Shown piece by piece: positions 11,975 to 13,909 of a DNA stretch of 64,000 bases (within the stretch, counting starts at the first letter, position 1; each line of letters opens with the position of its first letter). Location of the stretch: assembly GCF_902459465.1 (NCBI RefSeq), contig NC_047071.1, positions 9,176,001 through 9,240,000 on the forward strand, read 5' to 3'. The stretch is from Asterias rubens (lineage: Eukaryota). The notes under the pieces are model-generated. The model ran no database searches, was not told the DNA's origin, and worked only from the letters and a program-made list of their open reading frames with translations. A program made the translations under genes and the position numbers.

Positions 11975-13909
11975 ATGGGTCCAGTAACGACTAGGTTTTG
12001 GCTCTGCTTTGGTAAGTACTGTCTGTAGTTTAAAATTCAGTTTGTATCAATGACTATCCATGATTGCATAAATGTCTTACTTGAGTCAGAGGCAGTGAAC
12101 ACTATTGGTAATTATTCAAAATAACTATATCATAAGACCTTTCTTAACTACGAGTAGTGGGGAGAGGTTGATAGTATAAAACAATGTGAGAAACGGCTCC
12201 CTCTGAATTGCCATAGTTTTCGAGAAAGAAGCAATTTCCACGAGTTTGATTTCGGGACCTCAGATTTAGAGCTTGAGTTCTCGAAACCAACCATCTAAAC
12301 GAACACAACTTCGTGTGACAGGGTGTTTTTTCTGTCATTATTATCTCGCAAATTCGATGAGTGATTGAGCTCAAATTTTCACAGGTTTGTTATATTATGT
12401 TATGCATTATGTTGAGATACACCAACAGTGAAGACTAGTCTTTGGTAATTACCAATGGTGTCCAGTGCCTTTAAAAAGAAGGTGTACGTTTGGAAAACAT
12501 TAATTTGTTACCAGCATACATCAGCTTACGATAGTGCGTAAGGCATATTTATAAACATTTCGTTTCGATATAATGTAGTCATGTTGAAAGATATCAGTTC
12601 TTCTGCACTCAAAATAATTTGAATCTGAGAAGCGTTACCGCGTAACGCCTCTCAAATTGCGTGTAAAGATCAACGATGTTCTTCCTCATAATCGCTCCGA
12701 ACTCGCGGCGATTATATCGAAAACGCGACTTTACATGAAATGTTACATGTTAGATTTAGTGTCACACACATAACATACTTAATAACCTGTAGTTTCGACT
12801 AACGATTTGGTTGCATTTATACCATATGTAATGTTGATGGTAACAAGTTCGCAACATCTACACTTATAAAATATCAAACAATCAAACGGCTCTAAAAACA
12901 AAATGCTGTTTTTTTTTTTAATAACTAAATTTCATATTTTTTCTCCCATATTATAGTTTATTTCCTAATCGTGTGCACAGTTGGGCCAGCCAATGCTCGG
13001 CTTTCGGATGCCGAACACACAGGCAAACTTAAACATCATGGAGCAGCGATCAACAGTACTCGCTCCAGCTTGAATCTACGGAGTCTCCGAGAGGACTTGG
13101 TGGAGAGATACGAGAACAGAGTCCACCGTGTCCGGAGAGATTCCTCGGAGGAGGTCGAGGAAGCCGAAGGGGAGAGCGTCGCCGAGAGTGAGAGCGAGGC
13201 TGGTACCGGAGGGGGCGGAGGAGGGGGGAGCCAGGGTGGTGGAGGCCTGGGTGGAGGAGGAGGCCAGGCTGGCGGACTTGGTGGAAGTCAGGGTGGAGGT
13301 CAGGGCTGGAGTCAAGGCGGAAGCCAGGGCGCGAGCCAGGGTGGAAGCCAGGGCGGGAGCCAGGGTGGAAGCCAGGGCGGGGGCCAGGGTGGAAGCCAGG
13401 GCGGGAGCCAGGGTGGAAGCCAGGGCGGGAGCCAGGGTGGAAGCCAGGGCGGGAGCCAGGGTGGAAGCCAGGGCGGGAGCCAGGGTGGAAGCCAGGGCGG
13501 GGGCCAGGGTGGAAGCCAGGGCGGGAGCCAGGGTGGAAGCCAGGGCGGGAGCCAGGGTGGAAGCCAGGGCGGGAGCCAGGGTGGAAGCCAGGGCGGGGGC
13601 CAGGGTGGAAGCCAGGGCGGGAGCCAGGGTGGAAGCCAGGGCGGGAGCCAGGGCGGGAGCCAGGGCGGGAGCCAGGGTGGAAGCCAGGGCGGGAGCCAGG
13701 GTGGAAGCCAGGGCGGGGGCCAGGGTGGAAGCCAGGGCACTGGATCGCGAAGCTACATACCTCTAAATCCTTACTTTAAAGTGCCACCAAGGAACAGGAG
13801 GAAGAACAACGCTTTAAACTCTGCTGCGTCTTCCATCAGGCTTGGTTGGGTCTGGAAAATGCTCCTAGTGCAAATGTTCGCTGTCATTACTTGCTATACC
13901 TTGATATGA
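11975..13909 (+). CDS. g3, exons 11975-12011 and 12957-13909: 329-aa (GGSQ)n repeat protein, predicted GPI-anchored
   Basis: TTT G|gtaagt donor and ttatag|TT acceptor give signal peptide MGPVTTRFWLCFVYFLIVCTVGPANA-RL. About 35 GGSQ/GGGQ units. C-terminus NSAASS + spacer + hydrophobic tail LGWVWKMLLVQMFAVITCYTLI with no cytosolic tail. Confidence 0.88.
12090..12470 (+). mobile_element. Kolobok-like MITE family A, in the g3 intron
   Basis: aggcagtgaacactattggtaatt...aattaccaatggtgtccagtgcct followed by TTAA. Confidence 0.85.
13315..13737 (+). repeat. Coding 12-nt tandem repeat (GGSQ) inside g3, with 24-nt higher-order alternation
   Basis: GGTGGAAGCCAG and GGCGGGAGCCAG alternate, with periodic GGCGGGGGCCAG (GGGQ) variants. 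Confidence 0.95.

What the first reader, a model, noticed from the sequence alone, without database searches (positions are those of the whole stretch)
13127..13909. g3: (GGSQ)n domain bracketed by two furin sites on a GPI-type anchor, a tethered precursor of a releasable polymer
Seen: RVRR (13127-13138) precedes the acidic linker and repeat, and RNRR (13790-13801) follows it, just before a GPI-signal-like end. Known: R-X-[KR]-R is the furin consensus; Gln-rich Gly/Ser repeats are typical transglutaminase substrates and self-assembling low-complexity domains. Inference: the precursor is displayed at the membrane and then cut twice to release an almost pure Gly-Ser-Gln chain with an acidic head, a possible fibre, glue or matrix component.
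Basis: partly seen in the sequence, partly recalled or inferred. Interest (0 to 1): 0.7.

Follow-up and report, generated by a model that had tools for sequence, protein, structure and literature searches.

The report
Orphan starfish anchored Gly-Ser-Gln repeat protein
A probably real but unconfirmed two-exon starfish gene encodes a floppy surface protein made mostly of GGSQ repeats, with two furin-type cut sites and a lipid-anchor-type tail; whether it is transcribed, cut or released as a polymer is untested.

Summary
RVRR (13127-13138) and RNRR (13790-13801) lie in one reading frame on either side of a Gly/Ser/Gln block. The frame ends at 13907-13909 in a hydrophobic tail with no cytoplasmic residues.

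What I added:
- A likely first exon (11975-12011, donor GTAAGT) completes a textbook signal peptide, giving a 329-aa precursor.
- The repeat is a young, almost perfect 24-bp coding minisatellite (18.8 copies, 95% matches). It occurs nowhere else in the 417.6-Mb genome, which earlier notes call Asterias rubens.
- The tail meets the rule-of-thumb anatomy of a GPI signal.
- The doubly cut product would not be "almost pure" Gly-Ser-Gln. It would have an acidic head (-10), 177 uncharged residues and a basic/aromatic tail (+5).

What could not be shown:
- No relative was found by any search, so conservation of the two sites is untested.
- No contig bridges the splice, so transcription is unproven.
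- Composition-preserving shuffles put a motif in both flanks in about 0.8% of trials, uncorrected for a post-hoc look.

Tethering followed by convertase release is a known design (ZP proteins, hemojuvelin's RNRR). This would be a new, domain-less variant of it. The anatomy is solid and the mechanism is speculative. Interest is modest.

The parts
11975..12011 (+). Proposed exon 1 coding part: 12 codons plus 1 base, the first half of the signal peptide. A at -3 and G at +4 around the ATG; donor TTG|GTAAGT at 12012.
   Evidence: It has the best donor and the best signal-peptide continuity of all phase-1 candidates within 4 kb upstream. Not confirmed by RNA.
12012..12956 (+). Phase-1 intron (945 bp) with a polypyrimidine tract and TATAG acceptor.
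   Evidence: Exon 2 has no in-frame ATG ahead of the repeat, so an upstream exon is required.
12090..12470 (.). MITE-like, very high-copy interspersed repeat inside the intron, with 25-nt terminal inverted repeats.
   Evidence: arms 12090-12114 and 12446-12470, 88% complementary; 653 to 19,337 contigs per run were laid on the stretch, with depth piling up at 12048-12482. This element explains the small 'RNA' shares.
12957..13909 (+). Exon 2: the rest of the signal peptide, the whole mature protein and the stop (TGA 13907-13909, followed by a second TGA).
   Evidence: The frame is open from 12929 for 326 codons in DNA of about 39% G+C.
12998..13138 (+). Basic N-terminal piece, residues 27-73 (net +5, pI 11.2), ending in RVRR (13127-13138). 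One N-glycosylation sequon (NST) at residue 45. Candidate propeptide.
   Evidence: The predicted helix, residues 53-83, spans the RVRR site.
13139..13204 (+). Acidic head, residues 74-95 (net -10), starting DSSEE. Two S-x-E sites (Ser75, Ser76).
13205..13735 (+). Gly-rich lead-in and (GGSQ)n block, residues 96-272 (177 aa). No charged residue and one aromatic (Trp126). 39 Gln-Gly dipeptides.
   Evidence: pLDDT is below 50 throughout.
13289..13738 (+). 24-bp coding minisatellite, 18.8 copies, 95% matches. An AGC>GGC (Ser>Gly) variant recurs every 96-120 bp, a higher-order repeat.
   Evidence: The pattern matched 24 times, all inside this array, and nowhere else in the genome.
13736..13801 (+). 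Basic/aromatic tail, residues 273-294 (net +5), ending in RNRR (13790-13801).
13817..13834 (+). Patch of small residues N-S-A-A-S-S (residues 300-305): candidate GPI attachment (omega) region.
   Evidence: Rule-of-thumb reading; no predictor was run.
13841..13906 (+). C-terminal hydrophobic end (residues 308-329), with a Lys and a Gln inside and nothing after it.
   Evidence: Hydropathy. Predicted helix, residues 293-328.

Best explanation
g3 is a lineage-restricted, two-exon starfish gene for a 329-aa secretory precursor that is almost entirely disordered. In order it has: a signal peptide; a basic 47-aa piece ending in RVRR; an acidic DSSEE head; 177 uncharged Gly/Ser/Gln residues encoded by a young 24-bp minisatellite; a basic/aromatic tail ending in RNRR; and a GPI-type C-terminal signal.

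The most likely course is as follows (inferred, not shown). The protein enters the ER, and the C-terminal signal is exchanged for a GPI anchor near Ser301-Ala303. A furin-type convertase in the late secretory pathway removes the basic piece at RVRR. This unmasks the acidic head and leaves a flexible, hydrated Gly/Ser/Gln chain on the cell surface. Cutting at RNRR, 6-9 residues above the anchor, could then shed the chain into the extracellular matrix. That last step is the least certain.
For: - Frame and motifs were read directly.
- Both flanks are open in one frame (about 100 and 55 codons) in AT-rich DNA.
- Exon 1 has a consensus donor, and the join yields an n/h/c signal peptide with A-N-A before the cut.
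- Four neighbouring genes have the same layout, a short first exon and a phase-1 intron inside the signal peptide.
- The two 12-bp halves of the repeat unit differ only at two synonymous positions.
- The C-terminus has small residues, a spacer and a hydrophobic end with no cytoplasmic tail. The neighbours instead end in a transmembrane segment plus a basic tail.
- Both flanks carry R-X-[KR]-R, joint shuffle frequency about 0.008.
- The genome has at least 14 convertase P-domain matches.
- RNRR is the convertase release site of GPI-anchored hemojuvelin (title cited in PMC2323002).
Against: - No relative was found anywhere, so nothing is known about conservation of the sites or the tail.
- No contig bridges the exon 1/exon 2 joint. 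The one contig from a run on record as RNA crosses the donor unspliced at depth 3. The runs that cover the 3' part are of guessed kind and lack the 5' part of exon 2.
- RVRR lies in a predicted helix.
- RNRR is followed by Lys.
- The hydrophobic end contains Lys313 and Gln318, and no GPI predictor was run.
- The near-perfect repeat could be a recent expansion with no settled function.
Confidence: 0.4

Rival explanations
1. An uncleaved surface spacer. The protein is made and anchored, by GPI or by a tail-less transmembrane segment, but the two R-X-R-R motifs are only basic patches. RVRR would be part of a charged helix paired with the acidic stretch, and RNRRK a basic patch next to the membrane. 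The protein would act as an intact, flexible glycocalyx or brush molecule, like the neighbouring small low-complexity membrane proteins.
For: - A predicted helix (residues 53-83) runs through RVRR, with basic and acidic halves that could pair.
- Each flank alone gives the motif by chance in 6-13% of shuffles.
- Lys follows RNRR.
- Neighbouring genes encode small single-pass proteins with low-complexity ectodomains.
Against: - Both flanks carry a full four-residue consensus, about 0.8% jointly.
- The switch from a basic to an acidic block exactly at RVRR looks like a propeptide boundary.
- The single-sequence helix prediction is weak evidence.
Confidence: 0.3
2. A matrix or mineral-associated protein. 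After cleavage, the DSSEE head is phosphorylated at S-x-E sites by a Golgi casein-kinase-type enzyme and binds calcium mineral or other matrix. The Gly/Ser/Gln block acts as a spacer or as a Gln donor for transglutaminase. The gene would belong to a co-oriented cluster of fast-evolving acidic or Gly-rich secreted and anchored proteins.
For: - DSSEE equals the first five residues of statherin's phosphorylated hydroxyapatite-binding domain DR9 (PMC5830524).
- Neighbours carry Asp-rich or SSSEEE stretches and Gly-rich repeats, in the same two-exon layout.
- The repeat has 39 Gln-Gly dipeptides, and transglutaminase cores are present in the genome.
- Skeletal matrix proteins are typically disordered, repetitive and rapidly evolving (PMC5460417).
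Against: - The Patiria miniata skeletal proteome contained no proteins with acidic repetitive regions (PMC5460417). However, residues 74-276 have no Lys or Arg, so tryptic proteomics would miss this protein.
- A five-residue match in acidic sequence is weak.
- There are no Lys acceptors in the repeat.
- There are no expression data.
Confidence: 0.12
3. Not a working gene: a coding-looking frame built around a recently expanded minisatellite (a decaying or newly arisen locus), weakly transcribed or not at all.
For: - No spliced RNA was seen.
- No homologue was found.
- The array is nearly perfect, hence young.
- The 3' flank holds an old duplicate of the last codons and stop.
Against: - About 155 stop-free flank codons lie in one frame in AT-rich DNA.
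- The donor and acceptor are of consensus quality and create a complete signal peptide.
- The hydrophobic end sits exactly before the stop.
- The layout is shared with the neighbours.
- Holes in contig data prove nothing.
Confidence: 0.15

Closest known systems
ZP-module polymer precursors (ZP3, uromodulin, tectorins)
   Same: They are made as membrane-tethered precursors (transmembrane or GPI). Many carry a consensus furin cleavage site just above the anchor, and the freed ectodomain builds extracellular filaments (PMC13361971; details of the mechanism from general knowledge).
   Different: g3 has no ZP module or any other Pfam domain and no cysteines in the released part. Any assembly would have to come from a low-complexity chain.
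Hemojuvelin/RGMc
   Same: [quoted passage not shown]
   Different: RGM proteins are folded, conserved co-receptors. g3 has no RGM domain, and its site lies only 6-9 residues from the putative attachment site.
GPI-anchored repeat coats of protists (procyclins, circumsporozoite protein) and fungal Kex2-processed wall proteins (from memory)
   Same: The layout is signal peptide, short N-terminal piece that is proteolytically removed, long simple repeat, then a GPI signal.
   Different: They come from unrelated organisms with unrelated sequences and different repeats (EP, NANP, Ser/Thr). This is only an analogy of design, and was not tested here.
Statherin N-terminal domain
   Same: The neo-N-terminus DSSEE equals the first five residues of statherin's phosphorylated hydroxyapatite-binding peptide (PMC5830524).
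   Different: Only five residues match. Statherin is a 43-aa vertebrate salivary peptide, and no homology is implied.
Neighbouring small low-complexity membrane proteins in the same window
   Same: Same strand and the same two-exon layout, with a phase-1 intron in the signal peptide. Ectodomains are acidic, Gly-rich and disordered.
   Different: They end in a 23-aa transmembrane segment plus a basic cytoplasmic tail, and g3 does not. There is no sequence similarity to g3; only g_35833 and g_52616 match each other.

Membership tests
Proprotein-convertase (furin) substrate | R-X-[K/R]-R motif in a protein that enters the secretory pathway | tested here: met
   RVRR at residues 70-73 and RNRR at 291-294. 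A signal peptide is reconstructed from exon 1 plus exon 2.
Proprotein-convertase (furin) substrate | Site exposed in a flexible, accessible segment with favourable P1'/P2' residues | tested here: inconclusive
   Site 1 lies in a helix predicted from the single sequence (pLDDT 68-89), with Asp at P1'. Site 2 lies at the start of the C-terminal helix, with Lys at P1'. No furin-site predictor was available.
Proprotein-convertase (furin) substrate | Conservation of the sites in orthologues, or demonstrated cleavage | not testable with these tools
   No orthologue was found.
GPI-anchored protein | N-terminal signal peptide plus a C-terminal hydrophobic stretch that ends the protein, with no cytoplasmic tail | tested here: met
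   The hydrophobic end, residues 308-329, runs to the stop.
GPI-anchored protein | Small residues at omega and omega+2, with a polar spacer of about 6-10 residues before the hydrophobic end | tested here: met
   N300-S301-A302-A303-S304-S305, then S-S-I-R-L-G, then the hydrophobic end. This is a rule-of-thumb reading.
GPI-anchored protein | Positive call by a trained predictor, or PI-PLC release | not testable with these tools
   No GPI predictor is among the tools. Lys313 and Gln318 inside the hydrophobic end leave some doubt.
ZP-module proteins | ZP-N/ZP-C module with conserved cysteines | tested here: not met
   Pfam scan gave 0 families at E <= 1. There are no cysteines in residues 27-324.
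RGM/hemojuvelin family | RGM N- and C-terminal domains | tested here: not met
   The Pfam scan was empty. Only the RNRR tetrapeptide is shared.
Transglutaminase substrate | Accessible Gln in flexible sequence, and a Lys acceptor for self-crosslinking | tested here: inconclusive
   The disordered block has 40 Gln residues and the protein has 39 Gln-Gly dipeptides, but residues 74-286 contain no Lys. The protein could act as a Gln donor only. Transglutaminase cores are present in the genome.

The most novel reading that the evidence does not exclude
Double convertase cleavage would free a 221-aa, roughly 19-kDa chain with sticky ends. It would have a -10 acidic (possibly phosphorylated) head and a +5 basic/aromatic tail, joined by 177 uncharged Gly/Ser/Gln residues. 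Such a chain could associate head to tail and be fixed by transglutaminase through its Gln-Gly sites, giving an extracellular gel or fibre that needs no folded domain. It would be one product of a starfish-specific cluster of two-exon genes for fast-evolving low-complexity surface and matrix proteins.
Probability: 0.08. Interest if true: 0.65.

Novelty: new variant of a known kind. Interest (0 to 1): 0.3.

Why it matters
If the mechanism holds, this would show that the "tether, cut, release and assemble" route known from ZP-module proteins can work with a chain that has no folded domain. It would also give a simple natural Gly/Ser/Gln polymer with charged ends for materials work.

More modestly, it is an example of a coding minisatellite creating a new surface protein in one lineage. 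Because residues 74-276 have no Lys or Arg, standard tryptic proteomics would never see this protein. Proteins of this type may therefore be under-counted in echinoderm matrix and secretion studies.

Tried and rejected
**Homology searches, all blank or only compositional**
- Word-based searches with the N flank, the C flank and the N domain alone found nothing.
- Exhaustive phmmer gave 487 hits. All 150 listed aligned over the repeat, and the 10 I fetched, chosen because their alignments reached furthest into the flanks, were unrelated low-complexity proteins.
- Pfam and ESM Atlas features (best 0.77, below any useful level) gave nothing.
- Two metagenome scans and an exact-product look-up were blank. 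The tools warn that records of this genome and very near ones may be left out, so these blanks do not show the gene is unannotated or truly orphan.

**Own genome**
- There is no paralogue of either flank, and the repeat pattern is confined to this array.

**RNA**
- Two run searches and the single read-laying run were inconclusive.
- The small RNA shares came from the intronic mobile element. No contig spans the splice. One contig at depth 3 crosses the donor unspliced.
- Contigs of uncertain kind cover 13669-14300 and beyond.

**Rejected readings**
- The +2 frame ORF (13128-13766) and the antisense (PWLP)n ORF (13312-13740) are open only because the repeat has no stops. Neither has flanks, a start or signals.
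- Other candidate first exons have weaker donors. All would give the same mature protein.
- Paralogy with the neighbours: no blastp match to g3.
- Glycosaminoglycan attachment: the repeat serine is followed by Gln, not Gly.

**Literature**
- No paper in the library holds an eight-residue GGSQ repeat string.

Full report
**1. What is in the sequence**

The stretch 12929-13909 is one open frame of 326 codons on the + strand, in DNA of about 39% G+C. RVRR is encoded at 13127-13138 and RNRR at 13790-13801, both in this frame. The frame has no ATG ahead of the repeat. It begins right after a polypyrimidine tract and a TATAG acceptor at 12956, so it must be a downstream exon.

About 945 bp upstream there is an ATG in good context (A at -3, G at +4). 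It is followed by 12 codons and one base, then the consensus donor TTG|GTAAGT (11975-12011). Joining the two exons in phase 1 gives a 329-aa protein. Its first 26 residues form a classical signal peptide: a charged start, a hydrophobic core of about 14 residues, and A-N-A before the predicted cut.

A scan of all phase-1 ATG-to-donor candidates within 4 kb found none with as good a donor and as good continuity. Every alternative would give the same mature protein.

**2. Anatomy of the precursor**

| Residues | Feature |
|---|---|
| 1-26 | Signal peptide |
| 27-73 | Basic piece (net +5, pI 11.2) with one NST sequon, ending in RVRR |
| 74-95 | Acidic head starting DSSEE (net -10, two S-x-E sites) |
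| 96-272 | Gly/Ser/Gln block of 177 residues: 98 Gly, 40 Gln, 34 Ser, 6 others, no charge |
| 273-294 | Basic/aromatic tail (net +5) ending in RNRR |
| 295-299 | K-N-N-A-L |
| 300-305 | Small residues N-S-A-A-S-S |
| 306-309 | Short spacer |
| 310-329 | Hydrophobic end, running to the stop; a second TGA follows |

A single-sequence AlphaFold model is disordered (pLDDT below 50) over the whole repeat. It shows only two helices, at residues 53-83 (which includes RVRR) and 293-328.

**3. The repeat**

At the DNA level the block is a 24-bp minisatellite: 18.8 copies, 95% matches. The units are almost identical. An AGC>GGC (Ser>Gly) variant recurs every 96-120 bp, which indicates a higher-order repeat built by unequal exchange.

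The two 12-bp halves of the unit differ only at two synonymous third positions. This is a weak hint that GGSQ was kept at the protein level before the last expansion. A degenerate pattern for three GGSQ units matches 24 times in the 417.6-Mb genome, all inside this array.

The array is therefore young and unique, and its length is probably variable; I could not test that. ORFs in the +2 frame and on the opposite strand exist only because the repeat lacks stops, and they have no flanks.

**4. Is the motif pair more than chance?**

Shuffling each flank while keeping its composition gives R-X-[KR]-R in 13% of N flanks and 6-7% of C flanks, so both together in about 0.8-0.9% of trials.

Site 1 has basic residues at P1, P2, P4 and P7, with Asp at P1'. 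It sits exactly where the sequence switches from basic to acidic, as at a propeptide boundary. Site 2 has Pro-Pro at P5-P6 and Lys at P1', which from memory is not favoured.

**5. GPI or transmembrane?**

The end of the protein fits the textbook anatomy of a GPI signal. There are small residues at candidate omega and omega+2 positions (S301-A-A or A303-S-S), a spacer of about six residues, and a hydrophobic end with nothing after it.

The four neighbouring genes end differently, with a 23-residue transmembrane segment followed by a basic cytoplasmic tail. The contrast is real. Lys313 and Gln318 in the hydrophobic end, and the lack of a trained predictor, leave doubt. I put GPI anchoring at about 55-60%.

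**6. Relatives**

None were found.
- Word-based searches with each flank, and with the N domain alone, were blank.
- The exhaustive profile-free search gave 487 hits. All 150 listed aligned over the repeat, and the 10 I fetched (those reaching furthest into the flanks) were unrelated low-complexity proteins.
- Pfam, the ESM Atlas, two metagenome scans and an exact-product look-up were blank.
- The gene is single-copy in its own genome.

I therefore cannot say the gene is unannotated or truly orphan.

**7. Transcription**

This is unresolved. Runs listed as RNA held only small shares of the 5' stretch. Laying them showed that those shares come from a very high-copy, MITE-like element in the intron (12090-12470, 25-nt inverted ends).

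One contig from a run on record as RNA covers 11851-12039 and crosses the donor unspliced at depth 3. Another covers 13190-13359. Runs of guessed kind hold 13669-13791 and 13748-14300 and beyond, starting where the array ends, but nothing of the 5' part of exon 2. No contig bridges 12011^12957. Contigs cannot show absence, so this neither supports nor refutes the model.

**8. Context**

The window holds several co-oriented genes of the same build: a short first exon, a phase-1 intron inside the signal peptide, and one large exon for an acidic and/or Gly-rich disordered ectodomain. Plausible first exons are at 4104-4143, 33271-33304 and 50725-50758.

Only the genes at 35846-36462 and 52611-53245 show sequence similarity to each other (52% over 31 residues around the transmembrane segment, E 8e-6). 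g3 matches none of them. Earlier notes of this scan name the genome Asterias rubens and describe other clusters of small, hypervariable membrane proteins in it. The 417.6-Mb size fits my own recollection of that assembly.

**9. Mechanism and comparison**

The best reading is a GPI-anchored, disordered surface protein whose basic N-terminal piece is removed at RVRR and which may be shed at RNRR.

The design is known:
- Many ZP-module proteins carry a consensus furin site, and uromodulin is a GPI-anchored member that forms polymeric filaments (PMC13361971). That the site lies just above the anchor and that cleavage frees the ectodomain to polymerise is from general knowledge.
- GPI-anchored hemojuvelin is released by convertase cleavage at a conserved RNRR (title cited in PMC2323002).

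g3 is not a member of either family, because it has no ZP or RGM domain. It would be a domain-less variant of the design.

The doubly cut product (residues 74-294, about 19 kDa, pI 4.4) has an acidic head and a basic/aromatic tail, which could pair head to tail. It has 39 Gln-Gly dipeptides but no Lys in residues 74-286, so it could only donate Gln in transglutaminase cross-links.

The DSSEE start equals the first five residues of statherin's phosphorylated mineral-binding peptide. This, together with the acidic neighbours, suggests a matrix or mineral role. However, the Patiria skeletal proteome reported no proteins with acidic repetitive regions (PMC5460417). That negative is weak, because the protein has no tryptic site between residues 74 and 276.

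**10. Verdict**

The gene model has been extended and is plausible but unverified by RNA. The mechanism is coherent with known precedents but is wholly inferred. This is a new variant of a known design, of modest interest.

Noticed in passing
window 12090-12470: A MITE-like element in the g3 intron with 25-nt terminal inverted repeats (88% complementary). It is extremely abundant in all four runs laid (653 to 19,337 contigs per run on the stretch, piled up here). It caused the misleading small 'RNA' shares.
   Followed up: partly
window 13893-13951 and 14086-14145: A 60-bp direct repeat (80% identity). The last codons and double stop of g3 are duplicated about 190 bp downstream in the 3' flank. 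By eye the similarity seems to reach further upstream, into the hydrophobic-tail codons. This looks like an old tandem duplication of the gene's end.
   Followed up: no
window 4104-4143+5474-6144; 17198-17908; 33271-33304+35846-36462; 50725-50758+52611-53245: Four co-oriented genes for small single-pass membrane proteins with Gly-, Pro- or acid-rich disordered ectodomains and short basic tails. Three show the same short first exon and phase-1 intron in the signal peptide as g3. The last two share their transmembrane region (52% over 31 aa).
   Followed up: partly
window 617-1053: A secreted protein exon whose mature start is a basic stretch (RKFRR...KNRQR) followed at once by an Asp-rich block, then Thr-rich repeats. 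This is the same basic-then-acidic order as in g3.
   Followed up: no
window 31210-32059: A 21-bp tandem repeat (about 40 units, 77-84% matches) that is open on both strands. On the + strand it reads as a His/Asp/Glu heptad, (HEALGVD)n. I did not work out whether it is an exon.
   Followed up: no
window 37307-37504 and 42944-43098: An 11/44-bp tandem repeat and a (CAA)n / AACATA microsatellite. Probably non-coding.
   Followed up: no
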